NCBI GenBank assembly: GCA_002269645.1
Contig: NIVC01000143.1
Coordinates: 620,001 to 684,000 of the forward strand
DNA: 64,000 nucleotides
Reading direction: 5' to 3'
Origin: Macrostomum lignano
Lineage: Eukaryota
Both the position numbers and the translations under genes were made by a program. Shown one piece after another: positions 1 to 63,455 of the stretch. How positions within the stretch are numbered: the stretch's first letter is position 1; the number at the start of each line of letters is the position of its first letter. The notes under the pieces were generated by a model. That model made no database searches. It saw only the letters and a list, made by a program, of their open reading frames with translations, and was not told where the DNA came from.

Positions 1-796
1 CAAAAAACTGCTCAAAATGCGCGATTTTTTTACTAAAGCCTCCTTAGCGCCGCTCCACTTCTACCGATCCTCTTCAAATTTAACACAATTGATCTTCAAC
101 TATTTTGGCACAATCGTGTAAAATTTCGAGTCGGAAAGTTAATCCTGAAAGGCGCTGTGCACTTTTAAAGTTAGGCTGTTTTTTTCAGCGAGGCAGCCAC
201 CCCAACCTCCGCCCGCCTGCCTCTCTTTCCCGATCTGGGCCCAGATGTGTAAAAGGGTTTCAAAATTGACTAACTTTCAGCTGCCATAAGTTTGCTCCAC
301 GTAAAGCGATTGACTTTAAACTTGACACAATTCTTCATTGACTCATTTTCTATCTAAATGTAAAGTTTCAACTCTGTAACTCAACCGAAAAAGAAACTGT
401 AAGCATGTGAAGTTTGTCTGCTTTTTCTGTTGTTTGTGCCACTCACTCACTCATTCCCCCAGAGCCAGACGAAGGGTCAGGCGATAGGACTAAATGTACA
501 TAGCAAATGTACAGTGTTTTGGAATAACTTTATTTATAGCCTTCTCTGCACCCCGAGAGTGGAGAGGCTACGTTTAGCCATAACAGTTTAGTGAGAAACT
601 CTAACCACTGTCCTCTGTATTGGCAAACTCTGCAGCAGTTTAACAGTGGATGGCAATTGGCAAATCGAGGGAATCCAGCATGATTTGTAAAAGCGAAAGA
701 TTTATGAAAAGGCGATGCAATGCAATACAACCCTACTAAATTAGTCACACCATAGAAATTTTAGGTTTCTCTTAAAAAGTACTTTAAATTTTAAAT

Positions 797-1010
797 GTCC
801 TCCTAAGAAATGCTTATTTCCTTGGTTGTTAGACTGATGCAGACTGCAGTGGAACTGAAAATACACAAATTCCTTTCAGGACTTCAAATTGGCAAGAAAA
901 ATGACGTGATCAAAGCATGAGAACAGCCATGAGTGTACTACGTCCCACAAACTGCATGGCTTTCCAAGCAGGAATGGGCAGACTTTCACTTCAAAAGCCA
1001 GATAAAGAAT
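797..1010 (+). repeat. Dispersed repeat segment A, direct copy at about 61861-62070
   Basis: Hand alignment: tatttccttggttgttagactgatgcagactgca vs tatttccttagttgttagactgatatagactgca; ggctttccaagcagg...aaaagccagataaa vs ggctttccaagtagg...aaaggccagataaa. Both copies are followed by GA-rich sequence. Confidence 0.8.
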
Positions 1011-1040
1011 CCAGCTTATGTGCGGGCTAGATGAGAGTGG

Positions 1041-2040
<1,000 letters not shown>

Positions 2041-3723
2041 AGACGATAGAAATTTTAAAGGATCCAAGGGACATAGGGAGAGTCAGGGAGAGGCCAGAGT
2101 TTGCCAATACATGTTTTAGAGTCAGACAGACATTGCCTGGCATTCTGTGGAGTACCCCAGCATTCCAGCAAACAATATCAACGTTTGCCTCAAACCCTAA
2201 TTTTACACGAATGTGCTCCATTTTATGTCTACCTCTATCCTACTAACTATTAATTTGTTTGTGTATGGGGTATGGCCTTAGATTTCAGAATACATGCAAA
2301 AGTAGTTCCGGGGATTGGAATTCCCCGGGTTCAAAATCCGCGGGTTTCAACAGCTTGTTTATTTTATAAACGCGATTTTTTTATGATCATCTTTTGATCC
2401 GATCCGACCGACAGTAGTTGTACGGCAAGGATATAGTTATTTATTATCAAGTTTGGAACTTTTGCACACGCTAATTTCCGTCATTTTAGGACAACAAAAT
2501 GTGTATAAAAATGGTTTATTGGGCCAAGACTGAGAAAACATAAGTAAAAGTCACGAAGTCAGATTAAAAAGCAGAATCTGATAGGTCTGAATTCGATTAT
2601 TTGGTCTTGAACTCTGCAAAAGGAAACTGCTAAATCCTATATACTAAGAATATCTGTCTGTTAAGAAAAAATATATGGAAGCCACACTACCATCAAATGA
2701 AGCAAATTTTCGAGCGATCATGCAAAATGTTAGAATGATTAAATAATCTTTGACAATTACATTCACCTCATTTTTTATGCTGTCAATTTGTAATTTTTAC
2801 AAGTAGGTCTAATTTCAGGCATTCACACTGCATTCAACTGTCTGAGTCCGATGAAAATGACTGGGCTTCAGCTTAGAGGAGGGTGATACAAGAGTTCCAA
2901 ATTGATTGCATAGCCACGGACCATATTGTTGTGTTGCACATGTTTCTTGCTGGGTCTAATAAATCAAACTTTTTTATTCAGTAGAGTTGAAAAACTACAA
3001 GCATTTTGTGTATTAGGTTATTACTCATTAATAGTGTATAGTCTATATCAGAATACAAAGGCTAGTACTCTTATTGATTGGTGTAACTAGTGCAAAGCAA
3101 GCTAGCAATAAATCTAACTTTAGTTTATTGTAGGCTTAGGCTACTAGTAGTAAACTTAAAAATTTGTTGAGGGGGAAGATTCTTAGATAGTAAAGACCTA
3201 GGGAAAGGGTGGAAGGGTCACAGGTGGCTTTGTTTTTGGCAAAAAATTGCTTGGTCTTACCTTTGTTCTTTTTTAGACCTTTGCGGCTTTGCCTAGGCCC
3301 TAAGAAGAAAAGAAACTAGGATTTTGAAATAGGGCTTTTTATACAATCTTTAATAAGATTAGGCCTAAGAATAGCTAGGCCTAAGCCTAATGATCTTTAA
3401 AATAATTTTCAATTAATCAAATATATATTAAATTTGACTAGGAGCCTAAGGCCTATATCTGTATAAGGTACCAATGTGGTTTTATTTTCAAAATCATTTT
3501 TCATTTGAATTTTTATTAATACTGATAAGTTATAATGCTAATACATATAGTACTAGTATAGCTATAAGCTATGTCATTACTATATATCCAAAAATTACTA
3601 GAGATTACTAGATATTAGGCCTAACCTAGGCCAACTCAGAGTTGGATAATGCTTATTATTTACTGAGTTGCTTACTATAGCTTAGACAGTTGCTTATTAT
3701 TTATAGTATTAGGGTACAGACTT

Positions 3724-4738
3724 TTGCAACCTCCAAAATTCGGTTGACCATGTGACTTAGTTTTAACAAAAAATGTGACTTACATATAAAAAGAGCTCTA
3801 AAGCAAAATTAATGCAACTTTGGATAAATAGCAGGAATAACTATGACCGAGGTTTTTTTTCGCCAGAGACAATGTGCAAAATCGCACCTTGTGCCAAATT
3901 TCAAGGTGCAATTTTAAGGCTCAGAGTGCAATTTCTCTTGAGTCTTGTTTCAGACAACTGGGAATGTATATTTTAATATCTTACATAAGACTATAGCCAT
4001 AGGCTATATCGCCTATATGACTTAATAGGATTTAAAGAGTTATTTTGTTTCATATTTTAAGGCAGTGCATGAAAAATAGCTTAAGCATAGTTAAGCCTTT
4101 AAAGAAAAATGGTTATAAGACTGCACTTAAACTGCACCTACTTTTTTAATTTCAGGGTGCAATTTTAAAATTTATTAAGGCCCTACATATATGTTAGGCT
4201 AGAGATAAAAAGAAGACAATAATGATGCACAAGTGAAACATAGCTAACCATATTGCAATTGCACCTAGTTGTTCTTTAATTACCCTATGCAAGTAGGCAG
4301 ACTTAGGCCAATGGCCAACTATTCAAATTGACAAAAGCAAGTTTTTTCATAGTAAATACTAGCAAAATACTCAGGAAAATCATTGGGTCCTTTAACAAAA
4401 TAAAATAGTACTATTAGTTCTACTAGTATAGTGTTTACTACATTTTTAAAATAGTAAAATAGGGAACTAACAAGTATGATAGATAATCAAGGTGCCTAAT
4501 AGGTTTACTAGGCAATCTAGTTTATTGCATTAAACTAGTTTTCAGTTTTTTACACAGAGATGATTGGAACCAATGGAATATGAGCATGCATGTGCAACCT
4601 CCAAAATTTGGTCAGCCGTGCAACTTAGTTTTAACAAAAATGTGATGTAGTTTTTGGCCAAAAATGCAACTTACATATAAAAAACCCTAAAGCAAAATTA
4701 ATGCAACTTTGGATAAATGGTAAGAGTAACTATGACTG
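3724..4738 (+). repeat. Pair of direct repeats of about 130 bp (3724-3850 and 4594-4738)
   Basis: gcaacctccaaaatt.ggt...acttagttttaacaaaaa.tgtga...acttacatataaaaa...ctaaagcaaaattaatgcaactttggataaat...taactatgac occurs in both places. Confidence 0.85.
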
Positions 4739-6414
4739 TCTTATTAAGCCAAAATGCCTCATCAGCTACTTAGTACTACTACTTAAGTATCTGTTTGGGT
4801 GGGAATTTTTGCGACTTCCTTGGTTGGCCACCAAATCGGTGGGCCAGATCGGCCAACTTGACTAACTGTTGCACATGTATGAATATGAGTAGTAGGTATA
4901 TTATAAATATTAGACAAAGGTCAAATCTTGTCTCATCTCATCACTGTAGCTGTATGGCTAGAGTCTTAGGACATTGTTCATAGACCCAAAAATTCCTCAG
5001 AGCCCATGTGTCTAAGTCCAACTAATAAATAGTCAATATCTTGTTGGCTATCATCAGTGAAAGCTTCTATAAGTTAATAACAATGTCAAAGGCAGACAAA
5101 GGGCTTTGCAGTTAGCCTAAGGTTGGCTTTAAAGGCAATTATGATTAGTGCTCTGGGCATTCTAGCAATTGCAAAGTTGATAAATTGGTTTAAAAGTTTG
5201 AAAAAAACGCAAAAATAATTTAATATATAGCAAACTAAGAGATTGTCAGTCTACTAACACTGTTATTTATCATCTAGCACCATATCTTGCACAAGGTACC
5301 AGAATCTCATGGATAGTTAGTAATCTTAAAACCAACTTGCTAATCATAAGTTTGTAACTCATTGTCTTGATTTTGTTGACCCAAATGACCTAACCTACGA
5401 GTATATAAGTTACTTAGTTAAAGTTTTACAAAGTTACAAAGTTACAGTAGACAAAGCCAAAGTTACTTAGTTACAGTAGACAAAGCATAAATACCATTTA
5501 AGGCATATGAGCACATTGTAAGCCAAGTTCTAGTGTCTTAAAAGGATTTCAAGTGAGAACTTTGAGTTCTTTATTTAGGAGTTCATATGGTGGCATGTGC
5601 ATGGAAATCCAGAAGCAGCATTTGCCAATATACCATATTAGATTATATTAGATCTATCATTATTACTAGTATTCATTGATCCATAACTACTAGTTATACT
5701 ATTGAACTTTTTTTCTAGTTTATTGTTACATTTACTGTTATAGTTAAACAAGCCAACAAATGTTTTCAATGTTAAAGCTTAGCTTATAGCTTAGTATATA
5801 GCTTAGCTCAAAGTTTAGCTAAATCCAAATGAAAAATGAAAAAGCCCAAAAAACAATTGCATTAGCCTAGTGCCCTTTATAAATGTAGACTATGTTTATA
5901 TGATTCCTTTAACAAAAATTTAGTATATTCTATAATAATGGGAAGATATCAAAAGTGAGGGGAAGTGCATGTATGTCTATACAAATATATACTTAGCACT
6001 ATTAAAAAAAATGACTATTTTGAAAAAAAGATCTGAGAAAACTGATTGGGGTAGCTTCTATCCAGCCCTTGCACACCACTCCCCCACTTTATTCCTTAAC
6101 TCAAGTCTGGTGTAGTGTAGTTAAATTGCATCACTGGCAAGATTGAAAGACTTTACCTGCACTGTTAAAAGTGGCGACCACAGATGGAATCTTCTGTGAT
6201 ATTCGATGTTGCTGAGTATACATGGAAAAAGCGAGCATGATGCAAAGTGTGCATTAAATATGACTTAATATCTTTAAAAAGCATAGCCTATATATTAGGT
6301 ATTGAAGTTGTAATGTTGATTGGGACTGCTAAAACTTGTTTTCAGTGGAGCTGAAAGAAAAATTCAACAACAATCTAAATAGACCTGTAAGTAGCAGTCA
6401 GCAGAAGTGCTTCA

Positions 6415-9400
6415 ATGTCTACTGAGGCTGAACCAGCGGCTGATGGCAACAATTCAGCTCAGGCCACGGACAAACCTGTCAAGCAGGCATCAACAACGGA
6501 TGCCAGTGCGCCTAAGAAAGGCAGCAATTACAGCGGGGATAATAACAGTGAGGCTGTGAACTCCAATGACAATGAGGCTACTGCTACAGAAAAAGAATCA
6601 ATAGTTGCCAAACTGAACTCAGACAGAGGCATCTCAGCCGAGCTAGCTAATTTTTTAGCCGAGTTAGTTGTCTCGCCGAATAAAATCTTCTCGCTAGACG
6701 ACTTCGACGAACGAGCGACTAACGCCGTGAAAGATTTGGACGCTGAATTTCTTCGCTCAGTAGTTGACGAACTGCTGGTTAAGGATTATACCAATATCAG
6801 TAACAAGTCTGCCTGTCTGTGCGGTCTTGTGAAACAGATGAAGCTGAAGAGGCAACAGCAGCAGCTGGGCGATCCCGCTGATGCTGATCGACGTGGTTCC
6901 GCCGCCTCCAGTGGCGCTCCGTCGACGTCCGGCGCTTCGGCAACCGGAGCAGCTGCTGGTGCGGCGGCTGCATCAGGTGCCACCCTGTCCAAACTGGGGC
7001 CTGATGAAGCTAAACTGAAGGAGCTGCTAGCCGAAATTAAATTCTGCCACGAGGTATGCTGCTAGTGTTTTAAGTTGGACTTTGAGTGGCATTACTGCCC
7101 ATTCCGCCGACTCCCCTGAGCAGGCACACAAGCGAGCGGATACTTACTCAGTCATACGCACAGGCACACACTCACACAGGAGTGTACAGCTTCCTTAACT
7201 TTATTTATCGCTAGGCATGTACACTTCACTGTGCCTTGGGGGTTGGGCCTCAAGGGCGTTAATTGCACGAGCAGAGCCAAAGCCGAGATTCTAATTTAGC
7301 CTCAAATTAATGCGACTGCACTGGTAATCTGAGGGCTGCGCTACACCACTAGGATACGCCCCCATGATACTAGTGTTAGTAGTGTATATCAACAAATATA
7401 AGCGGCGCTTCATCACTCGCAGGTGACGGTTGGCCAACGCCGCCTCGGGCCACCAATCGGAGCCGAGGAGCTCAAGGACAGCTCCCAGTGCGAGATATTC
7501 GTTGGCAAACTGCCAAAAGACATGTACGAGGATCGGATCTATCAGATGTTCAGACCAGTTGGTCCGATTTACGACATCCGGGTGATGGTTGACCCTCCTA
7601 CTGGCATGGGCCGGGGGTTCTGCTTCGTGTGCTACACCAGCAAGCAGGACGCCTCAAAGGCGGTCGAAAAGTTTCACGAATACGAAATTAAACCGCAGAG
7701 ACGGTTACAGGTTTGTTAATTAATCAGTACATTGTGTCCTTTCTTGTTAGCTGGCTCACTCTGTCACTCACACTGTCACTCCTGCTGTCATACTGTCTCA
7801 CCCCTGTCTCTGTCTCCCTCTGTCACTCCTGCTGTCTCACCCTGTCACTCTCATTGTCTCACTCTGTCACTACTGCTGTCTCACCCTGTCACTCTCATTG
7901 TCTCACTCTGTCACTACTGCTGTCTCACCCTGTCACTCTCATTGTCTCACTCTGTCACTACTGCTGTCTCACCCTGTCACTCTCACTGTCTCACTCTGTC
8001 ACGCTCACTGTCACCCTGCCACGCTCACTGTCTCACCCCGTCACTGTCTCACTCTGTCACTCTCACTGTCTCACTCTGTAACACCTGCAGTCTTTCTTTC
8101 ACTCTCGCTGTCTCGTTTCACTCTGTCACCAATTCCTCTCCGCACCTGTCACCCCCAGGTGAACCTGGCCACCCCGAACCTCCGCCTATTCGTTGGCAAC
8201 ATACCGAAAACCCTGGACCGAGCAAAACTCATGGACGATTTCTCCCGCGTCCTTGACGGAGTTGTGGACGTGATTGTCTATGGCTCAGCTGACGATCCCC
8301 GGAAGAAGAACCGAGGCTTTTGTTTCTTAGAATTCGACAAGCACAGTTCGGCTAGCGCAGCCCGTCGCAAGCTGATGAAATATCCCCGGGTCTGGTCGTC
8401 CGATGTCTGGGTGGACTGGGCTGACCCACTGGACGAGCCCGATCCGGACGTCATGGCCAAGGTTCGGGTGCTGTACGTGAAGAGCCTCACCATGGATGTG
8501 ACTGAGGATAAGCTGCAGGAGGTATGCGATTTTCAACTGGGATTGGGTTCTTGGAGTTAGGATTTGAATTCTTGGAATTGCGTTTTGGTTTCTTAAAATT
8601 GGGGATTTGGATTCTTAGAATTGGGGATTTGGACTCCTAGAATTGGGGATTTGGATTCTTAGAATTGGGGATTTGGATTCTTAAAATTGGGGATTTGAAT
8701 TCTTAGAATTGGGGATTTGGATTCTTAGAATTGTGGATTTGGATTCTTAGAATTGGGGATTTGGATTCTTAGAATTTAGGTTTCTAGGAATTAGGGATTT
8801 GAATTCTTAGAATTAAGGTTTCTAGGAATTAGGGATTTTGGATTCTTAGAATTTAGGTTTCTAGGAATTGGGGATTTGGATTATTAGAATTAAGGTTTCT
8901 AGGAATTAGGGATTTGAATTCTTAGAATTTAGGTTTCTAGGAATTAGGGATTTTCGTTTCTTACAGTTGATTATGTGCGTTTTCTAGAATCGGGGTTTTG
9001 TAATTTTGTAATTTGTAATCTTGGATTTTTTATTCGTCATTTTTGGGATTTCGTAAATTGATTATTGAATTAGGGACATCAGGCTAACCTTATTAACTTA
9101 AGCTAAAAACCTGATTTCATCTCCGCAGGCATTCTCAGTCTACGGCCCCCTTGAACGCGTCAAGAAAGTCAAAGACTACGGCTTTGTGCACTTCGAAGAA
9201 CGCGAAGACGCCCTGAGGGCCATGGAGAAGCTGGACGGCACCAGCATTGGCAATAGCGGCCCGCTCAGCGTCACCCTGGCCAAGCCCGTGTCCGAGCGAG
9301 CCAAGCAGCGCAAGGAGGAACGGCGGATGCGAAACACCGGCATGCCGCCAATGCCACCGCCTGCGGCTGCCGCCTACCCGCACCATCATCCTCAGGCTGC

Positions 9401-10661
9401 CTACCAGCCAGGGTTCTATTCCCAACACCAGTCCCAGCACCATCCCGGATATCATGTGAGACATTTGTTTGTTGTCCGCTCTTGTTCACGATCCCCATTC
9501 AGCTATTCACAATCCTTTCAGCTATTCACAATCCTTTCAGCTATTCACGATCCCTATTCAGCTATTCACGATCCCTACTCAGCCGTTCACAATCCCTTTT
9601 CAGCCGTTCACAATCCTTTTTCAGCCGTTCACAATCCCAATTCAGCCGTTAAAAGTCCCCATTCAGTTATTCACGATCCTTTTCAGTTATTCACGATCCT
9701 TTTCAGCTATTCACGATCCTTTTCAGCTATTCACGATCCTTTTCAGTTATTCACGATCCTTTTCAGCTATTCGCAATCACTGTTCAGTTATTCACGATCC
9801 TTTTCAGCTATTCGCAATCACTGTTCAGTTATTCACGATCCTTTTCAGCTATTCACGATCCTCTTTTAGCCATTCACAATTCCCCATTCAGCCGTTCACG
9901 ATTTCATTCAGCCAATCACAATCCTCATTTAGTTATTCACGATCCCCATTCAGCCATTCACGATCCTCATTTAGCCATTCTCAATTCCCAATCAGCCGTT
10001 TGCGATTTACATTAAGTCATTCACAGTCCTTATTCGGCTATTCACGATCCCTATTCAACCATTCGCGATTTACATTCGCCATTCACAATCCCCATTCACC
10101 AATGCTCTTCTGTCTTCACAGGGCATCCCGCCAGCGCCAGCTGGCGCTCCGTGGGCCGCAGGCGGAGGCTACGGGCCCAGCTCCAACGCCCACCATCAGG
10201 AGCAGCAGCAACAGGCCTACGCTCCCACCGGCACACCCGGTGATCAGAGCACCTGGTCTGTACCTGGTGACCAGCAGCTGTACTATCAGCATCTGCCAGC
10301 CATGCCTTATCAGCCTCCCTATCCTCATCAGCTGGCTTCCCCTCCGCCACCGCCGCCGCCTCCGTTCCAGCAGCAGCAACAACAGGCGCAGCCTCCTCAG
10401 ATGATGCAGCATCCAGCTCCTACTGGCAGGCTTCAGCGAGGTGGTCGAGCCTATCCGCAAAGCCAGCTGCCTCTGCAGCAACAGCAGCAGCAGCAGCAGC
10501 AGGCTCCCATGCCCAGTATGAGAGGCCACAGAGGCGGCGGCAGACCACCTTACGGTCGGAACGGCGGTCGCGGTGGCCTAGGTTCGAACTCGCGACCTCC
10601 TGCTCCTCTTCCTCAGCAGCAGCAGCAGCAGCAGCAGCCGCCTCCTTACCAGAATTCTTAA
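6415..10661 (+). CDS. SYNCRIP: hnRNP Q/R (SYNCRIP-like) RNA-binding protein, about 718 aa; join(6415..7053,7423..7710,8159..8521,9129..9455,10122..10661)
   Basis: N-terminal acidic domain (DFDERATNAVKD...NKSACLCGLVK), linker GPDEAKLKELL...VTVGQRRLGPP, three RRMs (IFVGKLP/RGFCFV, LFVGNIP/NRGFCFLEF, VLYVKSL/KDYGFVHF), WADP..EPDPDVMAKV signature and a Q/P/RGG tail. All four introns are GT-AG, phase 0, and the frame is continuous. Confidence 0.96.
7740..8125. repeat. Intronic minisatellite in hnRNP intron 2 (CTGTCACT-based, 44-bp higher-order unit)
   Basis: cctgtcactctcattgtctcactctgtcactactgctgtctcac recurs with period 44 (7841, 7885, 7929). Confidence 0.9.
8575..8955. repeat. Intronic minisatellite in hnRNP intron 3 (22-bp unit)
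   Basis: Unit aattggggatttggattcttag; it drifts into a longer variant containing aggtttctagg towards the 3' end. Confidence 0.9.
9485..10095. repeat. Intronic minisatellite in hnRNP intron 4 (20-bp unit)
   Basis: Unit tttcag(c/t)tattcacgatcct. Confidence 0.92.
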
Positions 10662-12084
10662 TGCCACGTTTGCAGTTTAAACTGCTAGCTTATATTTGTC
10701 TTAAGTGTTTTCAGTTTTGTTGGTGCTTGCCCCAAATCCCAGATGCTCCATTGTATGCTCAGCCCCCCACCCCACCGTGTCCCAGTGAGTTGTCACCAAG
10801 CCGTGCCTATTGACTCTGTCACAAGCCCTAGCTAATGAACTCCATTTGAAGCCCTATTGCGCGTGACCAATTTTGAGTTTATTGATTTTTACTACAGCTG
10901 ATATATTTCTCTGTTTTTTGGGTAGAAACTAACTGACCACACTACTCAGAGCTCAGCTCCACAGTTTGTTTGTTGTCTTTTTTTGCTTGTTTGTTTTTTT
11001 CTATCTGTCTGTCTCTATGCTTATTTTATCATCTCGTGTTTTTCCTGTGCTCATCTGTGCTCACTTGTGCCAGTAAAAACTGTACAGACTGCGCGTTGAC
11101 ATTAATTAACTAATAAATTAATAAGAGAATTGCAGTGACAACAGGACAGGGTTAACGCACTTGAAATGAGAAGATATTAATGCTCAACCGGTCCTCGACC
11201 TTAGCAGTGCCAGTTGACAATATCATTAGCTTCCTTAATTGTTGACCGGTGTAAATTCCTGTGTTTTCGATACATATCGGCTAAGTAGATCCTATAATGA
11301 TGGCTAATTCTTTCTGATGTCTGTCAATCTTCTACTTGATCCCCTCTTTCTCAAATCCCAATTCTCAAAGTCCATCACTTATGCAACTAGAAATCGCAAG
11401 GTGAAAAAACGTGTGCTGTTTGTTTTTTAAATCGCTGCTAGAAAAACGCTTGTTATGCTACTTGTATCTTCAATAGTAATAGTAGTATAGTAGAACTCAA
11501 AAAATATGAATTTTGCGCTTCAAAATTATTTATTCAGCTTTTTTTCTAAAAGCCCAATTGGCTTTATCTGTTTTGTGTTTTTAAAATTAAAAATAACCTT
11601 TTGTCATTCTAAATAAAAGTTTCCTTTAGAACTGTTGTTTTGTTTTGTTTGTGCGTTAGTCTGCGTTTGCCGTGACTTTTTATATTATTTAGAAAGCTAA
11701 ACAAGAAGTTGTTAATTGTTAAATCAAAAACTTTTCTCTCCGAATTTCCATCTTGTCTACCCTCCCCTATTTCCCGCTTTTTTGCTGTTTGTTCGCGCAC
11801 TTCTCTGCTTTCCACTGCGTGCACTACCGCTTCTGAGCTCCACCTTGGGCCGATAGCCACTTTTGGACCCGACAATGTCAGTTCATCCTGACTCGAACCC
11901 CGGCACCCCACTGCTCTCTGCCTCTCTGTCTCTTGTTGATCTTGAACCTGGTTTCCTAATTTATCTGTAATAAGTATTTATAATATACCTATACATATTT
12001 ATATAATATGAATTGTGCTTCTGCCAGACTGCTTCAAAATTTTTTATGTGCAAAACACTGCTTTTTTATTTTCCATTTCCATTC

Positions 12085-13390
12085 CCAGATCCTCAGTTCC
12101 TGGGCCAGCCTCCCAGATCCTCAGTTCCTGGGCCAGCCTCCCAGATCCTCAGTTCCTGGGCCAGCCTCCCAGATCCTCAGTTCCTGGGCCAGCCTCCCAG
12201 ATCCTCAGTTGCTGGGTCAGCCTCCCAGATCCTCAGTTGCTGGACCAGCCTCCCAGATCCTCAGTTGCTGGGCCAGCCTCCCAGATCCTCAGTTGCTGGA
12301 CCAGCCTTTCAGATCCTCATCAGTTGCTAGGCCAGCCTCCCAGATCCTCAGTTGCTGGGCCAGCCTCCCAGATTTTCAGTTGCTGGGCCAGCCTCCCAGA
12401 TCCTCAGTTGCTGGGTCAGCCTCCCAGATCCTCAGTTGCTGGACCAGCCTTTCAGATCCTCATCAGTTGCTAGGCCAGCCTCCCAGATCCTCAGTTGCTG
12501 GGCCAGCCTCCCAGATCCTCATCAGTTGCTAGGCCAGCCTCCCAGATCCTCAGTTGCTTGGCCAGTCTCCCAGATTCTCAGTTGCTGGGCCAGCCTCCCA
12601 GATTCTCAGTTGCTGGGCCAGCCTTTCAGATCCTCATCAGTTGCTAGGCCAGCCTTCCAGATCCTCAGTTGCTGGGCCAGCCTCCTAGATCCTCAGTTGC
12701 TGGACCAGCCTTTCAGATCCTCATCAGTTGCTAGGCCAGCCTCTCAGATCCTCAGTTGCCTGGCCAGCCTCCCAGATCCTCATCAGTTGCTGGGCCAGCC
12801 TCCCAGATCCTCAGTTGCGGGACCAGCCTCCCAGATCCTCAGTTGTTGGGTCAGCCTCCCAGATCCTCAGTTGGTTGGCCAGCCTCCCAGATCCTCAGTT
12901 GCTAGGCCAGCCTCCCAGATCCTCAGTTGCTGGGCCACAGCCTCCCAGATCCTCATCAGTTGCCTGGCCAGCCTCCCAGATCCTCATCAGTTGCCTGGCC
13001 AGCCTCCCAGATCCTCATCAGTTGCCTGGCCAGCCTCCCAGATCCTCATCAGTTGCCTGGCCAGCCTCCCAGATCCTCATCAGTTGCCTGGCCAGCCTCC
13101 CAGATCCTCATCAGTTGCCTGGCCAGCCTCCCAGATCCTCATCAGTTGCCTGGCCAGCCTCCCAGATCCTCATCAGTTGCTTGGCCAGCCTCCCAGATCT
13201 TCATCAGTTGCCTGGCCAGCCTCCCAGATCCTCATCAGTTGCCTGGCCAGCCTCCCAGATCCTCATCAGTTGCCTGGCCAGCCTCCCAGATCCTCATCAG
13301 TTGCCTGGCCAGCCTCCCAGATCCTCATCAGTTGCCTGGCCAGCCTCCCAGATCCTCATCAGTTGCCTGGCCAGCCTCCCAGATCCTCAG
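12085..13390. repeat. Intergenic minisatellite, 28-bp unit changing to a 31-bp unit
   Basis: cccagatcctcagttgctgggccagcct at the left; cccagatcctcatcagttgcctggccagcct from about 12940. Confidence 0.97.
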
Positions 13391-13571
13391 TAGCTATGCT
13401 GCCCTCCCAGTTTCATAATTTTGGCATCGTAAAATTGATCAATAGAAAGCAAATAGCAAACAGATAGAAGTCAACTTGCACTACTCGTCAGTAGTGCTAC
13501 GCAATGTTCTCAACGCAAGCAACAATGAAACAAAGTTGCTTTATAGTCGCGCAAAGCACAATCTCAGCCCC

Positions 13572-13773: not shown

Positions 13774-28477
<14,704 letters not shown>

Positions 28478-31258: not shown

Positions 31259-34200
31259 TTAACTGCTGAAATATGAATTTTGCAATTGCATTATTAATGC
31301 ATTAGAATCTTGGCTGACTATCTGAGATAAATTTGATATTCTAGATTCACACAGGGGTTGGCAAACTCCGGCCCGCGGGACACATTCGGTCCGCAAAACC
31401 TTTCGAACCAGTCCTCAGGTCCTTTGGAACTTCATATCCGGTCAGCTCATGGTTTGTGTCTCTTCTCAGCTCTCTAATCTCCTATCTCTTTTCTCTTCTT
31501 CTCTTCTCTCCTCCCCTCTCCTTCTCTCTTCTCTTCTTTCTTCTCTCCCGTCTCCTCCCTCTCTTTTATTTTCTCTCTGCTCTCCTCTCTTCTCCTCTTT
31601 CCTCTCTCCTCCTCTCTTCCCTTCTGTCTCCTCTCCTCTATTTTCTTCCTTCTCTGCTCTCCTCTGCTCTTCTCTCTCCTTCTCTCTCCTCTCCTCTCTT
31701 CTCTTCTTCCCTCTCCTCTTCTCTCTCCTTCCTCCCCTCTCTCCTCCTCTTCCCTCTTCTCTTCTCCTCTCCTCTCTCCTCCCCTCTCCTCCTTCTCTTC
31801 TTCTCTCCTCCCTTCTCCTCGATGGGAAACAACTTTAATTACGTACCTGTTAAGCTCTCGGCGAAGCTCCTGCATCTTGTGAAACGACTCGGCGTGGTAC
31901 TGCATCTGAGCCTCGGTAAAGTCTTTCAGAGCGCGCAGATGATTGACCTAAAATATTTATTATACACAGTTTTAATTAATATTAAACACGACAGCATCAG
32001 CTAATGGTCATCCAATATAATAAAGACGACTCACATGAGCACCCTTGATGCCCTCAAGCAGCAGTCGGGTTACCTCAAGCTGCCGCTCGTACTGCTGCTG
32101 CTCCTTGGCGTAATCAGACTCCGACTGGGGAAGGAGAGACCGGACAAGAGGGGATAACAGCGTAACTTTGAATTCAAGAGCTGGAGAAACCGTACTTTTC
32201 AAAATTACAGATCCCATCTCCCCTTCAGGAACCTCCGATCCCATCTCTCCCCTTCAGGAACCTCAGATCCCATCGCTCCCCTTCAGGAGCCTCAGATCCC
32301 ATCTCCCCTTCAGGAACCTCAGATCCCATCGCTCCCCTTCAGGAACCTCCGATCCCATCTCTCCCCATCAAGAATCCCAGATCCCATCTCTCCCCTTCAG
32401 AAACCTCAGATCCCATCGCTCCCCTTCAGGAACCTCAGATCCCATCGCTCCCCTTCAGGAACCTCCGATCCCATCTCTCCCCATCAAGAATCCCAGATCC
32501 CATCTCTCCCCTTCAGAAACCTCAGATCCCATCGCTCCCCTTCAGGAACCTCCGATTCCATCGCTCCCCTTCAGGAACCTCAGATCCCATCGCTCCCCTT
32601 CAGGAACCTCCGATCCCATCGCTCCCCTTCAGGAACCTCCGATTCCATCTCTCCCCACCAAGAATCCCAGATGCCATCTCTCCCCATCAATAATCCCAGA
32701 TGCCATCTCTCCCCATCAATAATCCCAGATGCCATCTCTCCCCACCAAGAATCCCAGATGCCATCTCTCCCCATCAATAATCCCAGATGCCATCTCTCCC
32801 CATCAATAATCCCAGATGCCATCTCTCCCCATCAATAATCCCAGATTCCATCACTCCCGATCAATAATCCCAGATTCCATCGCTCCCCCAATAGAATCCC
32901 AGATCCCATCTCTTTTAACAGAATCCCAGATCCTATCTCTTTTAACAGAATCCCAGATCCCATCCCCCCAATAGAATCCTAGATCCCATCTTTCCCCCAA
33001 TAAAATCCCAGATCCCATTTCTCTCCCAAAATAATCCTAGATTCCGTCTCTCCGCCAATAGAATCCCAAATCCCATTTCTGTCCCAACAGAATCGCAGAT
33101 CCCATTTCTCCCCCAATAGAATCCCTGATCCCATCTCTTCCCCCAATAGAATCCCAGATCCCATCTCTCCCCCCAATAGAATCCCTGATCCCATCTCTTC
33201 CCCCAATAGAATCCCAGATCCCATCTCTTCCCCCAATAGAATCCCAGATCCTATCTCTCCCCCCAATAGAATCCCAGATCCCATCTCTCCCCCCAATAGA
33301 ATCCCTGATCCCATCTCTTCCCCCAATAGAATCCCAGATCCCATCTCTCCCCCCAATAGAATCCCAGATTCCGTCTCTCCTTTTGATGAATCCCAGATCC
33401 CGTCTCTCATTTTGATGAATCCCAGATCCCGTCTCTCCCTTTGATGAATCCCAGATCCCGTCTCTCATTTTGATGAATCCCAGATCCCGTCTCTCCCTTT
33501 GATGAATCCCAGATTCCATCTCTCTCAACAGAATTCCAGATCCCATCTCTCCCAATAGACTCCCAGATCCTATGTCTCTCCCTATCAAGAATTCCAGATA
33601 TCAATCTCCCCATCAAATCCCAGAACCAATTTATCTAGGTGTAAAAATGATAAGATTTCATTTCTGCAATGTAAATACATTTCACAACTCTAAAGGGCCA
33701 AGGGTCTAATACAGACAGCCAATTATCAATCAGATTTACAAAACCCACCACGGAGTCTGCGTCCCGACCCCTCTTGGCCCGAGCCTTAGCCGAGTCCAAG
33801 TCCAACCGCGCATTGTCCAACTCGCGCTTCTCCTTAGCGGCCGCTTTCACGTCGGTCTCCAGAAATTCTCTCAATGGTCGAAGAAACGACAGAGTAGACG
33901 TTTTAATAAAGTCCCTCTCCAGTACGGCTAGCTCCTTCTCTACCTGACCTACTCGGGCCAGGGCGCCGCCGTAGTCGGTGGTGGAGCCCAGCTCAGCGCC
34001 GGCCGTGGCCATCACGCAGCCGAGATCTTCCAACGGGCTTAGCCGGTCTCGTTTCTCCCGTTCGAATTTCTCGCACATGAGATCTTCGACGCGATGAGCG
34101 GGGTTGGGCTGCAGCACAGCTTCGGTGCTTTTAAGAATCCGCTCAGTCCACTGCTGGGTGGCGTCGGATACGCGGACCAGCTCCTCGAACTCGGGAGGGA

Positions 34201-43269: not shown

Positions 43270-44222
<953 letters not shown>

Positions 44223-59370: not shown

Positions 59371-61160
59371 GCCACGAGGCCGCGGCGCGGGTGCACTGCA
59401 CTAGTTCTGAGAGATCATAACTAAAATACAATTGTACAAGTAGATTAATTAATCATTCAGTGCAGATGAACAGCTAACAGTCTAACATGACGGGTGAATA
59501 ATTTTGGCTTTAATAATGAATAATGGGTGAATATAATGTCGGGTTGCTGCGCAAGTTGACCAAATATCCTAGAACCGTTAATAGTATTACCGTAAGCTAA
59601 AGTAGCTCCTTATGTGGTTTAGAGCTGCAACTTTTTGCGGTATTTCTTGTACTTTTGCGTTTTGCAATACGGTAGGTGTAGCTTATTTAGGCTAAACCGA
59701 TGCTAAACCCCATATTTATATTGCTTTTATGCACATTCCTCAATTATTGATCGCACCACTTTCACTCTTTATTGATCGCCTCACCCCATTTTACGCTCAC
59801 TCGTGTATGCCTTGCTTTCTCTGAACTCATAAAAATATCGAACCATACCCAAATATATCGCTCAAATACTTTTCCGTTCCCATCGTTTCTATAGCGCATC
59901 ATAGTTTGTTTTTTTATCTGTAGTTATATTAGAGAAAACTATGTTTAATTGCTAAAGTAATTTTTTTTTAAATGAATTTACTAAATTAGCTAAAAGGTAA
60001 TTATGTATTTGTTATATTAGAATAATTTTTTTTAAGAAACGAACTTTCCAGAAAGTTCCTTATAAATTCGAAAGAAATTTAAATTATACAGTTCGTGCGC
60101 GGACCGCACTTACGTCACATGTAATAACCTATGTTGTTGGACTCACATCTAAGACTAAGTAAAGGCATTCAGAGTCCATACGCAGCCAGGTTTTTAATAA
60201 TACAATAACTCATTTATCTAAATGTGTTCCGTGTCGCTAATCACTATATATCACAATTCACAGTGCTTTTGTTTTTATTGCATTGCATTGTGATTTAATT
60301 GATCTCTTTTTTTGACAATTTTTAAGCCGACTAATTTTCTATAGTCAATATATTGGTTTTTATTCAATATTTTATTATACGTATTTATTTCAAAAGTAGT
60401 ATATTTTGTCTAATTTTTACTCTCTTCTGTCTCAGTTCCTGTTTTTTAAAACAATAAATAGGCTAGAGATAGGGATAGGCCTAGAATAGAACTTTTGCAC
60501 ACAAATGAAAGTATTCCAAAACTACAAGAGAAAAAGTTTTATTTTATTTTTCCACTTTTCAGCAAAAAAATAATTAGTATTCTGCAAATTTATGCATACC
60601 TTCAGGCTTCAGCTTCAGTTACTATTTATATCTTTAAGAATCAAAACTGTCTATATAGTATATTTGTCAATGTACAATTTTGATTGCTATAGACTCCCAA
60701 ACCAAACTCCTCAACTAAATTACACCAAATTTTGTTCTTACCCTAAACTCACTACAAAGATAGTCTTAGGCTAGGCCTACCTTAAATTTTCTAAAATCTA
60801 AGTCTAGTTACTCAAACAGTAAAAAAAGCAGTTTTTTTCACTAAATCATACATAGTGCCATTCTACTTTTACTAATCCTCTTAAATTTGAGATAGACAAT
60901 CTTCAACTATGTTATGTTGAAAATTGTTATATTATTTTATTGGCTAAGATGGCTATGTTAGCTATAATAGTTTGGTAAAAAATTTGAACCATTTCCCTCT
61001 ATATAGGCAAACTCTATCAATTTAATAGTAAGTAGCAATTTGCAATCCAAGGCAATCTAGCATGGTTTGTAAAAGCAAAATATTTTTGAAAATGCAATAC
61101 AAACCTAATTTAATCATAACAAAATTTTAATATTAAGTTTCATCTAAAGGTAACTGTAAT

Positions 61161-61837
61161 CCATAGTCAGGAAGGTGGCAAGTGCACGCGGGAATCAATT
61201 TATGGAAAAATCCTTGGTGCATGCCAATGTACGCCAATTTTTTAAAACCCTTAACATGACGTTTCTGTTGCACACCAAAAATCTTGAATACCAAAAATCA
61301 TGTACGCCTCATGTACATGTGATTTGAATATTAACCGTATTAGATACTATTTTTAAATAAATTTTCTACTTACATTAAACAAAGTTTATATAAAAAAAGG
61401 AAATTCGCTACAAAGAACATACTGAGTATCAAAAACTTTTTCTTCAAATTTCAAGAATTAAATAAACTAAAAGTCTACAAGAGTCACAAAATAAGAGCAT
61501 TTAAAAGTTATTGGATATTTTAATTTTAATGTAGGCTGTAGAGTGTAGGCCTGGCTGTAGCCTCAACTAGTTGGTTTAATCAATATTCAAATTCAATTGT
61601 TCACGTTTAACTTTATATATTGTATATATATAGTGTATACATCTATATCTGACTTGTTGATATACTGTCAGTTTGTAATTGCACGCCAAGGTTACACGCC
61701 AAGTAAAAAACTTGTACGCTGAAAATTTAGGTGTGGCTTGAGACCCCTATTTGCACGCCAACTTTGCATGCCAAAATTTTAGCGTGGCTTGTGCACGCGG
61801 GAAAATTCCCGCGTGCAGGCCACCTTCCTGAGTATGG
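61161..61837. mobile_element. MITE with about 35-bp TIRs and subterminal gcacgcca/gtacgcca repeats
   Basis: ccatagtcaggaaggtggcaagtgcacgcgggaat vs attcccgcgtgcaggccaccttcctgagtatgg. Confidence 0.82.
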
Positions 61838-61860
61838 ACTATAATGTAAAATTTAATATG

Positions 61861-62460
61861 GTCTCCTAAAAATATGTATATTTCCTTAGTTGTTAGACTG
61901 ATATAGACTGCAATTAGGTAGAAGATATAGAAATTCTTTTTTGGGCTACATATTGGCTAGAAAAATGATATTATTAAAGCATAAAAACAATGATAAAAGT
62001 ATTATGTCCCATAAACTGGCTTTCCAAGTAGGGATAAATAGCCTTTTACCTCAAAGGCCAGATAAAAAGGCTGAGAAGCAGATAAGAATAGAAATAAAAA
62101 GGAATAGGCAATTAAAAGAGTAGAAAAAGGTGAGAGAAGGGATAAAAAAGATAGAAGAAAAAAGGATAGACAATCAAGGGATAAGGATTATGAGAGAGAG
62201 AGAGAGAGAAAGAGAGAAGAAGGTGGAGAGAAGTAAAAAAAGTGTAAAAAAGAAAGGGAAAGAAAAAAGAAAAAGAAAGAGAGACAAGAGAAGCTAAAGG
62301 AAAGAATAGAGTTGAGAAAAAGGAGAGAATAGATGAAACATGATAGAGTAAAGAGGTGAAAAGCCAGGATAGAGTGGTAGAAAAGAAGAGAAGAAAAGAA
62401 AAGAAAGATAAGAGAGCAAAGATGGGAAAGATAATGAGACAGGATAAAGAAGAGAAGGAG
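61861..62460 (+). repeat. Second copy of segment A followed by a GA-rich tract
   Basis: Direct homolog of 797-1010, strongly AT-shifted. Confidence 0.75.
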
Positions 62461-62777
62461 AGCCTCCAATCCCAAAGGTACAAACTATTGCAAATACAAA
62501 AATATCAAATAATCCCTAACTAATAGAAATACAAACTAATAGCTTGAAGATAAATTGTTTATAATTATAGATAAGCAAAAATATCCTTTGAATAGAACAG
62601 TGTGTTTACTAATATAGATTTTATTTGTTTATTGAAATATATATTTTATATAGTTATTATTTTATAAATTTTATATGCTGTTATTAAAGACATATAAACA
62701 TATAGTGCAAAGGCTATTTTGTACTTTATTTTCTTAGGATAAATTGAGTATTTTACTTTTGTTTTATTATATTCTTG

Positions 62778-63455
62778 CAACAAGCTGTTGAAACCTGTGG
62801 ATTTTCAACCCAGGGAATTCCAATCCCCGGAACTACTTTTGCATGTATTCTGAAATCTAAGGCCATACACAAACAAAAACTTGTTAATAGTTAGTAGGAT
62901 AGAGGTATACATAAAATGGAGCACATTTGCATAAAATTAGGATTTGAGGCAAACACTGATATTGTTGGCTGGGCCGCTGGGGTACTGCGCAGAATGTCAG
63001 GCAATGTCTGTCTGACTCTAAAACATGTATGGGCAAACTCTGGCCTCTACCTGCCTCTCCCTACATCCCTTGGATCCTTTAAAATTTCTATTGTCTCTTC
63101 TGTTTCCTCTCTTCTCTCTCGTCCCTTGTCTCTCCTCTCTCATCTCTCCTTCTCTCGTATCTTCCCTCATCTCTCTTCTCTTTCATCTCTCTTATCTCAT
63201 CTCGTGTCTCTTCTTTTCTCTCTCCTCTCCTCTCTCCTCTCTACTTTTTCGTTTTCTCTCTCCTCTCCTCTCTCCTCTCTACTCTTTCGTTTTCTCTCTC
63301 CTCTCTCCCATCTTTTGTCGTATCTTCCCTCATCTCTCTTCTCTTTCATATCTATTATCCACTTATCACATCTCTTCCCTCTTCAGCTCTTCTTTTCTCT
63401 CTTCTCTTAACTGTCTCCTCTACTCTCTCATCTCTCCTCTCTACTTGTTCCTCTC
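62778..63455 (+). repeat. Inverted copy of segment B with a CT-rich tract
   Basis: Reverse complement of about 1850-2356. Confidence 0.92.

What the first reader, a model, noticed from the sequence alone, without database searches (positions are those of the whole stretch)
797..1010. Paralog pair shows directional C>T/G>A decay in CpA as well as CpG context (RIP-like signature in an animal)
Seen: aligning about 912-1008 with about 61976-62069 by hand gives about 22 mismatches. About 16 are C>T or G>A in the right-hand copy, about 7 of them CpA>TpA or TpG>TpA (cccacaaa>cccataaa, aagcagg>aagtagg, catgag>cataaa; just upstream tgatgcagac>tgatatagac, cttggtt>cttagtt). Only about 3 go the other way. 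Established: CpA>TpA conversion with TpA enrichment is the hallmark of fungal RIP, whereas ordinary animal 5mC decay is CpG-centred. Inference: the right copy sits in a domain under a localised cytosine-deaminating mutational process (dense CpG plus non-CpG methylation, a deaminase, or transcription-coupled damage). Direction is inferred without an outgroup.
Basis: partly seen in the sequence, partly recalled or inferred. Interest (0 to 1): 0.85.

Follow-up and report, generated by a model that had tools for sequence, protein, structure and literature searches.

The report
Old flatworm repeat decayed by cytosine loss
Two copies of a repeat in the flatworm Macrostomum lignano differ mainly by C-to-T changes in the older copy, a real regional cytosine-decay signature (strongest at CpG, then CpA) that hints at DNA methylation of old repeat DNA but is not fungal-style RIP.

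Summary
Over all alignable blocks (461 bp) the count is 60 against 15 (p=1.6e-7).

The window is Macrostomum lignano, NIVC01000143.1:620001-684000. The two sequences are copies of a composite repeat that contains a hAT-like MITE with a GA-rich core.
- Copy A (41% GC) is young. It is missing from the same site in a sister contig.
- Copy B (27-30% GC, no CpG left) is old. It carries a nested transposon.
- Two GC-rich relatives of the MITE support the direction GC to AT.

The decay is strand-symmetric and has no 5'-neighbour effect. It is graded by the 3' neighbour: CpG 61%, CpA 41%, CpT 27%, CpC 17%.

Independent comparisons of sister contigs show the same grading, but only in CpG-depleted AT-rich tracts (17%, 4.6%, 2.0%, 0.7%). 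In coding DNA it is flat.

RIP is not supported. Copies A and C are untouched, CpG rather than CpA leads, and the RIP substrate index is 1.55.

The best reading is tract-limited deamination of cytosine and 5-methylcytosine, probably linked to methylation, since the species keeps DNMT1 and DNMT3. The "RIP-like" label is not.

The parts
25..1030 (+). Copy A, left part (41% GC, 26 CpG in 1-1030). Blocks 25-106, 574-720 and 786-1030 align with copy B. The left arm of a hAT-like MITE starts at about 968.
   Evidence: alignments. (alignment of the left arm with element E). (composition).
1031..2046 (+). Copy A, GA-rich core of the MITE (92% purine, G/(G+A) 0.48).
2047..2359 (+). Copy A, right arm with a degenerate right TIR (about 2094-2125) plus a tail shared with copy C. 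Homology to the sister contig begins at 2358, so A itself has no counterpart there.
60825..61150 (+). Copy B, first two blocks (26.6% GC, no CpG).
61157..61841 (.). A 685-bp element with terminal inverted repeats, nested inside copy B (34% GC, 17 CpG). It is present in both sister contigs. Of its 18 differences between the sisters, 7 lie at CpG.
   Evidence: (23-nt TIRs, 91% complementary).
61842..62090 (+). Copy B, block 3.
62091..62505 (+). Copy B, decayed GA-rich core (G/(G+A) 0.35 against 0.48 in A) and a remnant of the right TIR at about 62481-62505.
   Evidence: (weak alignment of the TIR remnant, read by eye).
62779..63455 (-). Copy C, inverted and truncated. It is 83% identical to A 1677-2359 and 91% in the tail, with 42% GC. 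It is not AT-shifted although it lies 300 bp from B.
31352..31822 (+). Element D, a GC-rich truncated member of the same MITE family (TIR CAGGGGTTGGCAAACTCCGG plus a TC-rich core). Used as a rough outgroup.
2360..6000 (.). CpG-depleted, AT-rich, ORF-free tract next to A (33% GC, CpG o/e 0.27, GpC o/e 1.56, TpA/ApT 1.14). Transitions between sister contigs are graded CpG > CpA > CpT > CpC.
60801..62778 (.). The second CpG-depleted tract: copy B, its nested insert and the 21%-GC spacer. It shows the same graded spectrum between sister contigs.

Best explanation
B is an old, dead copy and A a young copy of a composite repeat that includes a hAT-like MITE with a GA-rich core.

Since the two lineages split, B has lost about a third of its cytosines and guanines through C:G>T:A transitions. 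The losses fall on both strands and in every dinucleotide context, graded CpG > CpA > CpT > CpC.

The cause is a cytosine-centred decay confined to certain tracts of old, AT-rich, CpG-depleted DNA. That is hydrolytic deamination of 5-methylcytosine at CpG and of cytosine (or weakly methylated cytosine) at CpA and CpT. The tracts are probably methylated in the germ line.

It is not a process triggered by duplication.

Shown: the asymmetry, the grading, the strand symmetry, the relative ages, and the tract-specific spectrum between sister contigs.

Inferred: the link to methylation, and that deamination is the chemical step.
For: 1. Size of the asymmetry. 60 C>T/G>A against 15 reverse in 461 bp, or 33% of C/G sites against 5.5% of A/T sites. 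The MAFFT recount gives 64 against 17.

2. Direction.
- The GC-rich family members D and E exist.
- In the A/B/E left-arm alignment, B has 4 GC>AT and 1 AT>GC change. A also has 3 GC>AT changes of its own.
- The GA-rich core of B is shifted from G to A (G/(G+A) 0.35 against 0.48 in A and 0.45 in C). This shows decay in CpT and CpC contexts as well.

3. Relative age.
- B carries a nested TIR element and has 0 CpG.
- A is absent at the same place in sister contig NIVC01001521.1.

4. Context. CpG 61%, CpA 41%, CpT 27%, CpC 17%. There is no 5'-neighbour effect and no +2 preference at CpA. Strand counts are 29 against 31.

5. Independent replication between sister contigs, with adjacent double changes removed.
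- Tract 2360-6000: CG 8/48, CA 19/391, CT 8/419, CC 2/198.
- Tract 60801-62778: CG 6/34, CA 8/196, CT 5/240, CC 0/105.
- Pooled non-CpG context effect: p=0.0009.
- Coding DNA is flat. Other low-divergence non-coding DNA gives CG 1.5%, CA 1.0%, CT 0.3%, CC 0.8%.
- CpG against non-CpG odds ratio: 7.4 in the tracts, 1.4 elsewhere (p about 1e-6).

6. The locus-wide spectrum, polarised with three sister contigs, is nearly symmetric. The GC>AT to AT>GC per-site ratio is 1.2-1.5. B's ratio of about 5-6 is therefore not the ordinary local spectrum.

7. CpG o/e is 0-0.27 while GpC o/e is 1.5-2.0 in these tracts. CpG o/e is about 1 in genes.

8. By my reading of the alignment, most of the A-against-C transitions in the tail lie at CpG or CA/TG pairs.

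9. M. lignano keeps DNMT1 and DNMT3 and has low-level 5mC (PMC11292947 and PMC9246332, both citing Wasik 2015).

10. Faster CpG decay in GC-poor DNA is an established idea (abstracts of PMC3169530 and PMC5054122).
Against: - There is no family consensus. Only five related elements could be reached. The outgroups D and E overlap the A/B alignment over only about 60 bp.
- The sister-contig comparisons in the tracts are unpolarised. In CpG-depleted DNA, TpG>CpG changes inflate the apparent CpG rate. The contrast among non-CpG contexts is immune to this.
- Divergence between sister contigs is mosaic, 0-4.3% per 1.3 kb. Absolute rates in the tracts are therefore not outliers. Only the within-tract ratios carry weight.
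- Other low-divergence non-coding DNA also shows CpA above CpT (18 against 6 events). Part of the grading may therefore be genome-wide.
- C lies in the same AT-rich neighbourhood and shows no AT shift. This fits 'old repeat DNA' better than a broad 'domain'.
- Methylation at these sites has not been measured. The CpA > CpT > CpC grading could come from weaker base stacking and easier melting rather than from methylation.
Confidence: 0.55

Rival explanations
1. Age alone. B is simply much older than A and C, and it drifted toward the AT-rich composition of the surrounding DNA under the species' ordinary, genome-wide AT-biased mutation. No tract-specific process and no methylation are needed.
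For: - B carries a nested insertion. A is missing from a sister contig. A and C differ by 9% against 24% for A and B.
- DNA around B has 21-29% GC. A process with that equilibrium would give a GC>AT to AT>GC rate ratio of 2.5-3.8, which is only marginally below the observed value of about 5 (my calculation).
- B's distribution over contexts is not distinguishable from the locus-wide polarised C>T distribution (chi-square about 4.2, 3 df, my calculation).
- CpA above CpT is also seen in other low-divergence non-coding DNA.
Against: - The three-way polarised spectrum of the locus is nearly symmetric, with an implied equilibrium GC of 0.40-0.46.
- Scaled by transversions, the A-against-C or sister-contig spectra predict about 20 transitions in each direction, not 60 against 15.
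- AT-rich tracts come in two kinds, CpG-depleted and CpG-normal, at the same GC content.
- The context grading is strong only in the CpG-depleted kind.
Confidence: 0.2
2. B descends from a different, already AT-rich source copy (subfamily). On this view most A/B differences arose in active master copies and not by decay in place.
For: - A and C share a TIR variant (CATGTATTGG...) that differs from D and E (CAGGGGTTGG...). Subfamilies therefore exist.
- No consensus could be built.
Against: - Differences between subfamilies would not be expected to be 80% one-directional transitions, nor to remove all 9 CpGs.
- B matches its own surroundings in CpG loss.
- All three W-specific transitions in B since the split from sister contig L003 that A can polarise are C>T or G>A. 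The one polarisable transversion is C>A.
Confidence: 0.1
3. Reverse polarity. The AT-rich state is ancestral, and A and C were enriched in GC, for example by GC-biased gene conversion.
For: - No full outgroup exists for most of the alignment.
- Gene conversion among sister copies is plausible, given the mosaic divergence.
Against: - The GC-rich relatives D and E support GC-rich ancestry.
- A lies next to AT-rich DNA and is a structural novelty in its contig.
- Creating 9 CpGs and 60 T>C/A>G changes, graded by what would then be the product context, is not what gene conversion predicts.
Confidence: 0.05
4. A RIP-like, duplication-triggered hypermutation, in which repeated copies are recognised and their cytosines are deaminated, preferentially at CpA.
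For: - C:G>T:A transitions dominate and CpA>TpA is the largest class by count, 26 of 60.
- TpA/ApT rises from 0.73 in A to 1.04 in B.
- CpA is about 3 times as changeable as CpT and CpC together in the tracts.
Against: - Partner copies are not co-mutated. A and C keep 41-43% GC and differ symmetrically, with 16 transitions and 13 transversions.
- CpG, not CpA, is the top context.
- CpA<->TpA dominance is about 0.76.
- The substrate index is 1.55 in B and 1.04-1.47 in the AT-rich tracts. The threshold is 1.03 or less, and RIP-affected fungal repeats score 0.3-0.7.
- The same spectrum appears in 2360-6000, which has no second copy in the window.
Confidence: 0.03
5. Editing by a single-strand cytosine deaminase (AID/APOBEC-like) or transcription-coupled damage on one strand.
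For: Only the excess of C>T changes as such.
Against: - C>T 29 against G>A 31 on the same strand. In the tracts the counts are 26 against 30.
- No 5'-neighbour (TpC) effect, p=0.62.
- Divergence is even across the three blocks, at 75-77% identity.
Confidence: 0.02

Closest known systems
Methylation-linked C>T decay of transposons and old repeats (5mC deamination, CpG depletion), as in vertebrates, plants and some basidiomycete fungi
   Same: - CpG is the most mutable context.
- CpG o/e is 0-0.27 while GpC is normal.
- The effect is confined to repeat-derived or AT-rich DNA, and genes are spared.
- It is strand-symmetric.
- The host has DNMT1 and DNMT3.
   Different: - A large non-CpG component: 49 of 60 changes, graded CpA > CpT > CpC.
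- No gene-body CpG depletion, unlike the usual invertebrate mosaic pattern.
- Methylation at the locus has not been measured.
Fungal repeat-induced point mutation (RIP; Neurospora crassa, Stagonospora nodorum)
   Same: - C:G>T:A transitions turn a repeat copy AT-rich.
- TpA rises.
- CpA>TpA is the largest single class by count.
   Different: - The other copies of the repeat are untouched.
- CpG is favoured over CpA.
- CpA and TpG are not depleted relative to ApC and GpT (index 1.55).
- No dependence on duplication is shown.
- No RID-type machinery is known in animals.
Isochore-type feedback: faster cytosine deamination in GC-poor, easily melting DNA (Fryxell and Zuckerkandl model; negative correlation of CpG mutation rate with local GC)
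   Same: - The decay is stronger in AT-rich tracts.
- It acts on CpG and on non-CpG cytosines.
- It is symmetric on both strands.
- It drives GC-richer inserts toward the local composition.
   Different: - AT-rich tracts of equal GC in this window fall into CpG-depleted and CpG-normal kinds, so GC content alone does not explain the pattern.
- The scale here is 1-4 kb, not hundreds of kb.
APOBEC3-type G>A hypermutation of retroelement copies in vertebrates
   Same: One copy of a mobile element shows a directional transition excess.
   Different: - Here both strands are hit equally.
- There is no TpC or CpC 5' context.
- The element is a DNA-transposon-like MITE, not a reverse-transcribed copy.

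Membership tests
RIP (repeat-induced point mutation) | C:G>T:A transitions dominate the differences between repeat copies | tested here: met
   60 of 110 differences are C>T or G>A, against 15 reverse transitions.
RIP (repeat-induced point mutation) | Both or all copies of the duplicated sequence are mutated (PMC2621366 abstract) | tested here: not met
   A (41% GC) and C (42% GC) are not AT-shifted. The A-against-C tail has 16 transitions and 13 transversions, with 9 against 7 by direction.
RIP (repeat-induced point mutation) | CpA is the preferred target, so CpA and TpG are depleted: (CpA+TpG)/(ApC+GpT) of 1.03 or less | tested here: not met
   Per-site change is CpG 61%, above CpA 41%. CpA dominance is 26/34, or 0.76. 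The index is 1.55 in the B blocks and 1.04-1.47 in the AT-rich tracts.
RIP (repeat-induced point mutation) | TpA/ApT of 0.89 or more | tested here: met
   B scores 1.04 against 0.73 in A. This is far below the 1.65-2.2 of RIP-affected fungal repeats, and the index is not specific.
RIP (repeat-induced point mutation) | Restricted to duplicated DNA | tested here: inconclusive
   The same spectrum appears in 2360-6000, which has no second copy in the window. Genome-wide copy number could not be checked.
RIP (repeat-induced point mutation) | RID/DIM-2-type cytosine methyltransferase-like enzyme acting before meiosis | not testable with these tools
5mC-deamination decay of methylated DNA | CpG is the most mutable dinucleotide, with CpG o/e low and GpC o/e normal | tested here: met
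   - A to B: 11/18 CpG sites changed, and all 9 CpGs are lost.
- Tracts: CpG o/e 0-0.27 with GpC o/e 1.5-2.0.
- CpG against non-CpG odds ratio: 7.4 in the tracts, 1.4 elsewhere.
5mC-deamination decay of methylated DNA | The organism has maintenance and de novo DNA methyltransferases | not tested
   Literature only: DNMT1 and DNMT3 are retained and 5mC is low (PMC11292947, PMC9246332).
5mC-deamination decay of methylated DNA | The affected DNA is methylated in the germ line | not testable with these tools
   No methylome is available. [quoted passage not shown]
AID/APOBEC-type editing | Strand-coordinated C>T or G>A changes with a 5' TpC or WRC context | tested here: not met
   29 C>T against 31 G>A. 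The 5'-neighbour chi-square test gives p=0.62.
hAT-like MITE (the repeat itself) | Terminal inverted repeats flanked by an 8-bp target-site duplication, with no coding capacity | tested here: met
   - Element E (L006:4588-5195) has 17-nt TIRs, 82% complementary. Its flanks are TTTTAGTA and TTTTAGCA (read).
- In A and B the TIRs are degenerate. The tool found none in A.
- Assignment to the hAT superfamily rests on the 8-bp TSD and on my memory of CAGGGGT-type TIRs. It was not tested against a repeat library.

The most novel reading that the evidence does not exclude
Macrostomum lignano methylates old transposon-derived AT-rich DNA in its germ line, and not its gene bodies. It does so at CpG and, more weakly, at CpA and CpT, in the order known for DNMT3-type enzymes. 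This methylation is mutagenic enough to erase repeats by C>T decay. Functionally that would be an animal counterpart of RIP or MIP-style genome defence, arising from methylation rather than from duplication sensing.
Probability: 0.2. Interest if true: 0.7.

Novelty: new member of a known kind. Interest (0 to 1): 0.4.

Why it matters
[quoted passage not shown] M. lignano is one of the few flatworms that keep DNMT1 and DNMT3.

The substitution footprint found here has three parts:
- strong CpG hypermutability;
- a CpA > CpT > CpC grading confined to old AT-rich repeat DNA;
- CpG o/e of about 1 in genes.

Together these predict methylation aimed at repeats and not at gene bodies, which would be unusual for an invertebrate. 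The prediction can be tested directly with one germ-line methylome.

The finding also explains part of the patchy GC content of this repeat-rich genome. It does not establish a RIP-like system in animals.

Tried and rejected
- Homology of B's 62463-62778 spacer with A's tail 2130-2359. Plain, transition-tolerant and purine/pyrimidine-alphabet alignments gave z = 0.9-2.2, the same as a reverse-complement control. Rejected: B has no tail.
- Homology between A's right flank and the DNA left of C (z = 3.5 in the R/Y alphabet). On inspection it is full of transversions. Rejected as chance.
- Finding other copies through proteins. A spurious ORF across the repeat gave no hits.
- An exon-1 query of the hnRNP Q-like gene gave no hits, although P0127 and P0128 contain that exon.
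- 'B plus its insert is a recent mutation hot spot' (1.9% divergence against 0.5% in the flanks). Rejected as evidence, because divergence between sister contigs varies from 0 to 4.3% per 1.3 kb across the locus.
- The transition/transversion contrast between the tracts and the rest. Not used. The baseline is heterogeneous, and transversions in minisatellite-rich DNA may be alignment noise.
- A third sister contig to polarise changes in the tracts. L004 is interrupted by an LTR retroelement before it reaches B. No protein handle exists for the A side.
- A +2 base preference at CpA (CAC or CAG, as for mammalian DNMT3A and DNMT3B). None found, p=0.25.
- Other dispersed, complex repeat pairs in the window for a second test case. 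None exist.
- ORFs in tract 2360-6000 to identify its origin. Only one 62-aa ORF was found, so the origin is unknown.

Full report
**1. The observation**

A MAFFT alignment of window 912-1008 with 61976-62069 gives 22 mismatches. Of these, 16 are C>T or G>A in the right-hand copy and 3 are transitions the other way.

The homology is wider than reported. The aligned blocks are 25-106 with 60833-60913, 574-720 with 60958-61102, and 786-1030 with 61849-62086. A GA-rich low-complexity core follows in both copies.

Over the three blocks (461 aligned bp, 75-77% identity) the differences are:

| Class | Count |
|---|---|
| C>T | 29 |
| G>A | 31 |
| T>C | 5 |
| A>G | 10 |
| Transversions | 35 |

The 60-against-15 split has a binomial p of 1.6e-7. 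It survives re-alignment, at 64 against 17 in 491 bp. In a purine/pyrimidine alphabet the two copies are almost identical (z = 42), so most differences are transitions.

**2. Where we are and what the sequences are**

The 780-aa ORF at 46292-48634 is a kindlin, 99% identical to a Macrostomum lignano protein. The window is NIVC01000143.1:620001-684000 of assembly GCA_002269645.1.

The same assembly holds two sister copies of the locus, NIVC01001521.1 and NIVC01000038.1. They are 97-99% identical to the window.

The paralog pair is part of a small repeat family.
- **Copy A** spans window 1-2359. It has a left part, a 1-kb GA-rich core and a right arm.
- **Copy B** spans 60825-62505. It has the same layout and is interrupted by a 685-bp element with 23-nt terminal inverted repeats at 61157-61841.
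- **Copy C** (62779-63455) is inverted and truncated. It matches A 1677-2359 at 83% identity.

The part from about A 968 to 2125 has the build of a MITE. A complete GC-rich relative, E, lies in the sister contig at L006:4588-5195. It has 17-nt TIRs and 8-bp flanking duplicates TTTTAGTA and TTTTAGCA (read). A truncated relative, D, lies at window 31352-31822.

An 8-bp duplication and CAGGGGT-type ends suggest a hAT-like element. That assignment rests on my memory and was not tested against a repeat library.

**3. Direction and age**

E and D are GC-rich and CpG-rich. A has 41% GC and B has 27-30%, with no CpG left.

Where A, B and E can be aligned (about 60 bp of the left arm):
- B has four private GC>AT transitions and one AT>GC.
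- A has three private GC>AT and one or two AT>GC.

Both copies therefore decay from a GC-richer ancestor, B much further. Some of the 15 "reverse" differences are in fact G>A changes in A.

B's GA-rich core is also shifted from G to A (G/(G+A) 0.35, against 0.48 in A and 0.45 in C). On the other strand that is C>T in CpT and CpC contexts.

B is old. It hosts a nested insertion, and both B and the insert are present in sister contig NIVC01001521.1.

A is young or at least a structural novelty. Homology between the window and that sister contig starts exactly at window 2358, and the sister has other sequence in A's place.

**4. Is it RIP-like?**

Normalised by available sites, the fraction of A's cytosines that are T in B is (similar values):

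| 3' context | Changed / sites | Fraction |
|---|---|---|
| CpG | 11/18 | 61% |
| CpA | 26/64 | 41% |
| CpT | 17/64 | 27% |
| CpC | 6/36 | 17% |

CpA is thus moderately favoured over CpT and CpC together (p = 0.02), but CpG leads.

Further points against RIP:
- CpA<->TpA dominance is about 0.76.
- TpA/ApT rises from 0.73 to 1.04, but (CpA+TpG)/(ApC+GpT) stays at 1.55. The usual criteria are 0.89 or more and 1.03 or less. RIP-affected fungal repeats score 1.65-2.2 and 0.27-0.74.
- RIP mutates both partners (PMC2621366). Here A and C are not AT-shifted.
- A and C differ by an ordinary, symmetric spectrum (16 transitions, 13 transversions, 9 against 7 by direction), although C lies only 300 bp from B.

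A single-strand deaminase or transcription-coupled damage is also unlikely. The changes are equal on both strands and show no 5'-neighbour effect (p = 0.62).

**5. Is it just ordinary decay?**

I used the three sister contigs to polarise recent substitutions over 17 kb of clean alignment.

That spectrum is nearly symmetric:
- The GC>AT to AT>GC per-site ratio is 1.2-1.5.
- The implied equilibrium GC is 0.40-0.46.
- CpG is only 1.3-1.9 times more mutable than other contexts.

B's ratio of about 5-6 (33% against 5.5%) is far from this. Scaled by transversions, neither this spectrum nor the A-against-C spectrum predicts 60 against 15.

The ratio is only marginally above what a relaxation toward the 21-29% GC of B's immediate surroundings would give. 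"Age alone" therefore cannot be excluded.

**6. Independent evidence for a tract-limited process**

AT-rich DNA in the window comes in two kinds at similar GC content.

| Kind | Tracts | CpG o/e | Other features |
|---|---|---|---|
| CpG-depleted, TpA-rich | 2360-6000; 34300-36000; B; the 62463-62778 spacer; 63456-63900 | 0.27; 0.13; 0; 0; 0.37 | GpC o/e 1.2-2.0 throughout |
| CpG-normal | 18000-18960; 29000-31300; 59000-60800 | 0.9-1.2 | |

I compared the window with its sister contig across both kinds and scored transitions by the 3' neighbour of the C-bearing allele.

| Region | CG | CA | CT | CC |
|---|---|---|---|---|
| Tract 2360-6000 | 8/48 | 19/391 | 8/419 | 2/198 |
| Tract 60801-62778 | 6/34 | 8/196 | 5/240 | 0/105 |
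| Both tracts pooled | 17% | 4.6% | 2.0% | 0.7% |
| Other low-divergence non-coding DNA | 1.5% | 1.0% | 0.3% | 0.8% |

In the pooled tracts the non-CpG context effect has p = 0.0009, and CpA against CpT plus CpC has an odds ratio of 3.0 (p = 0.0006). The changes are strand-symmetric. Adjacent double changes were excluded. Coding DNA is flat.

The CpG against non-CpG odds ratio is 7.4 in the tracts and 1.4 elsewhere (p about 1e-6).

Caveats:
- These comparisons are unpolarised.
- In CpG-poor DNA, TpG>CpG changes inflate the apparent CpG rate.
- The contrast among CpA, CpT and CpC is immune to this, because the ratio of TpN to CpN sites is the same for the three.
- Absolute divergence in the tracts is not unusual, since divergence is mosaic at 0-4.3% per 1.3 kb. 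I rely only on ratios within tracts.

The grading in the tracts is the same as in the A-to-B decay.

**7. Mechanism**

The best-supported reading is that old repeat-derived, AT-rich tracts in this genome undergo a cytosine-centred decay that genes and CpG-normal DNA do not.

The strong CpG effect, the loss of CpG with GpC kept, and the CpG-dominated differences in the MITE copies and the nested TIR element point to germ-line CpG methylation of such DNA (7 of the TIR element's 18 differences lie at CpG). M. lignano retains DNMT1 and DNMT3 and has low 5mC levels (PMC11292947, PMC9246332).

Two things could explain the non-CpG component, graded CpA > CpT > CpC:
- weak non-CpG methylation, which follows the same order in DNMT3 enzymes (established knowledge, not tested here);
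- easier melting and deamination at weakly stacked pyrimidine-purine steps in AT-rich DNA. The known negative relation between CpG decay and local GC is the nearest precedent (PMC3169530, PMC5054122).

I found no CAC or CAG preference and cannot separate the two explanations.

The "domain" may be no larger than the old repeat DNA itself. The AT-rich DNA just left of B has normal CpG.

**8. Verdict**

- The inferred direction is probably right.
- A localised cytosine-decay process is partly supported by independent data.
- The RIP analogy fails on three defining features: partner copies spared, CpG above CpA, and no CpA/TpG depletion.
- The finding is a new instance of a known kind of process, deamination-driven decay of old and probably methylated repeats, in an animal whose methylation pattern is unknown.
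- Interest is moderate. It gives a concrete prediction for a flatworm methylome that is cheap to test. It does not establish a new genome-defence system.

Noticed in passing
window 1-64000; L001, L003, L005, L006: The window is Macrostomum lignano NIVC01000143.1:620001-684000. The assembly holds two further copies of the whole locus (NIVC01001521.1 and NIVC01000038.1). Their divergence from the window is mosaic, from 0 to 4.3% per 1.3 kb, consistent with the species' hidden polyploidy plus gene conversion.
   Followed up: partly
window 1-2358 against L006:1-6200: Copy A and everything to its left in the window have no counterpart at the same place in sister contig NIVC01001521.1. Homology starts exactly at window 2358. 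The sister has about 6 kb of other sequence there, including a complete GC-rich MITE.
   Followed up: partly
window 61157-61841: A 685-bp non-coding element with 23-nt terminal inverted repeats (91% complementary) is nested in copy B. It is CpG-rich at its ends. Of its 18 differences between sister contigs, 7 lie at CpG.
   Followed up: partly
window 31352-31822; L006:4588-5195: A MITE family with CAGGGGT-type ends and a GA/TC-rich microsatellite-like core. The copy in L006 is complete, with 8-bp flanking duplicates TTTTAGTA and TTTTAGCA. The window copy is truncated next to what looks like a coding exon on the minus strand.
   Followed up: partly
L004: about 12045 to the locus end (21206): The third sister contig carries an LTR retroelement insertion, with an LTR repeated at about 12045 and 20840, that is absent from the window and from L003. 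It was seen only while reading the locus. It was not analysed, assembled or saved.
   Followed up: no
window 46292-48634, 57433-58638, 38905-40781: Coding sequences have CpG o/e of 0.8-1.05 (kindlin 1.05), so there is no sign of gene-body CpG depletion. Some AT-rich intergenic tracts have CpG o/e of 0-0.27. This is the opposite of the usual invertebrate mosaic pattern.
   Followed up: partly
window 22210-22617 and 45226-45933; also 12083-13410, 17320-17970, 18968-19742, 24315-25321, 32199-33630, 43270-44224: There are many long minisatellite arrays. One family is shared between two places 23 kb apart at 95-96% identity. Several arrays lie inside introns of the hnRNP Q-like gene (7100-8190 and 9440-9975).
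   Followed up: no
window 6415-10658; P0127 and P0128: The hnRNP Q-like gene has at least five exons. The annotated product of the sister contig (P0127) runs out of frame after RRM3, compared with the UniRef model P0128. This is probably an annotation or frameshift problem.
   Followed up: no
window 37616-38080 (minus strand): A 154-aa ORF resembles the C-terminal part of a non-LTR retrotransposon reverse transcriptase, judged from memory of the motif. It has no Pfam hit.
   Followed up: no
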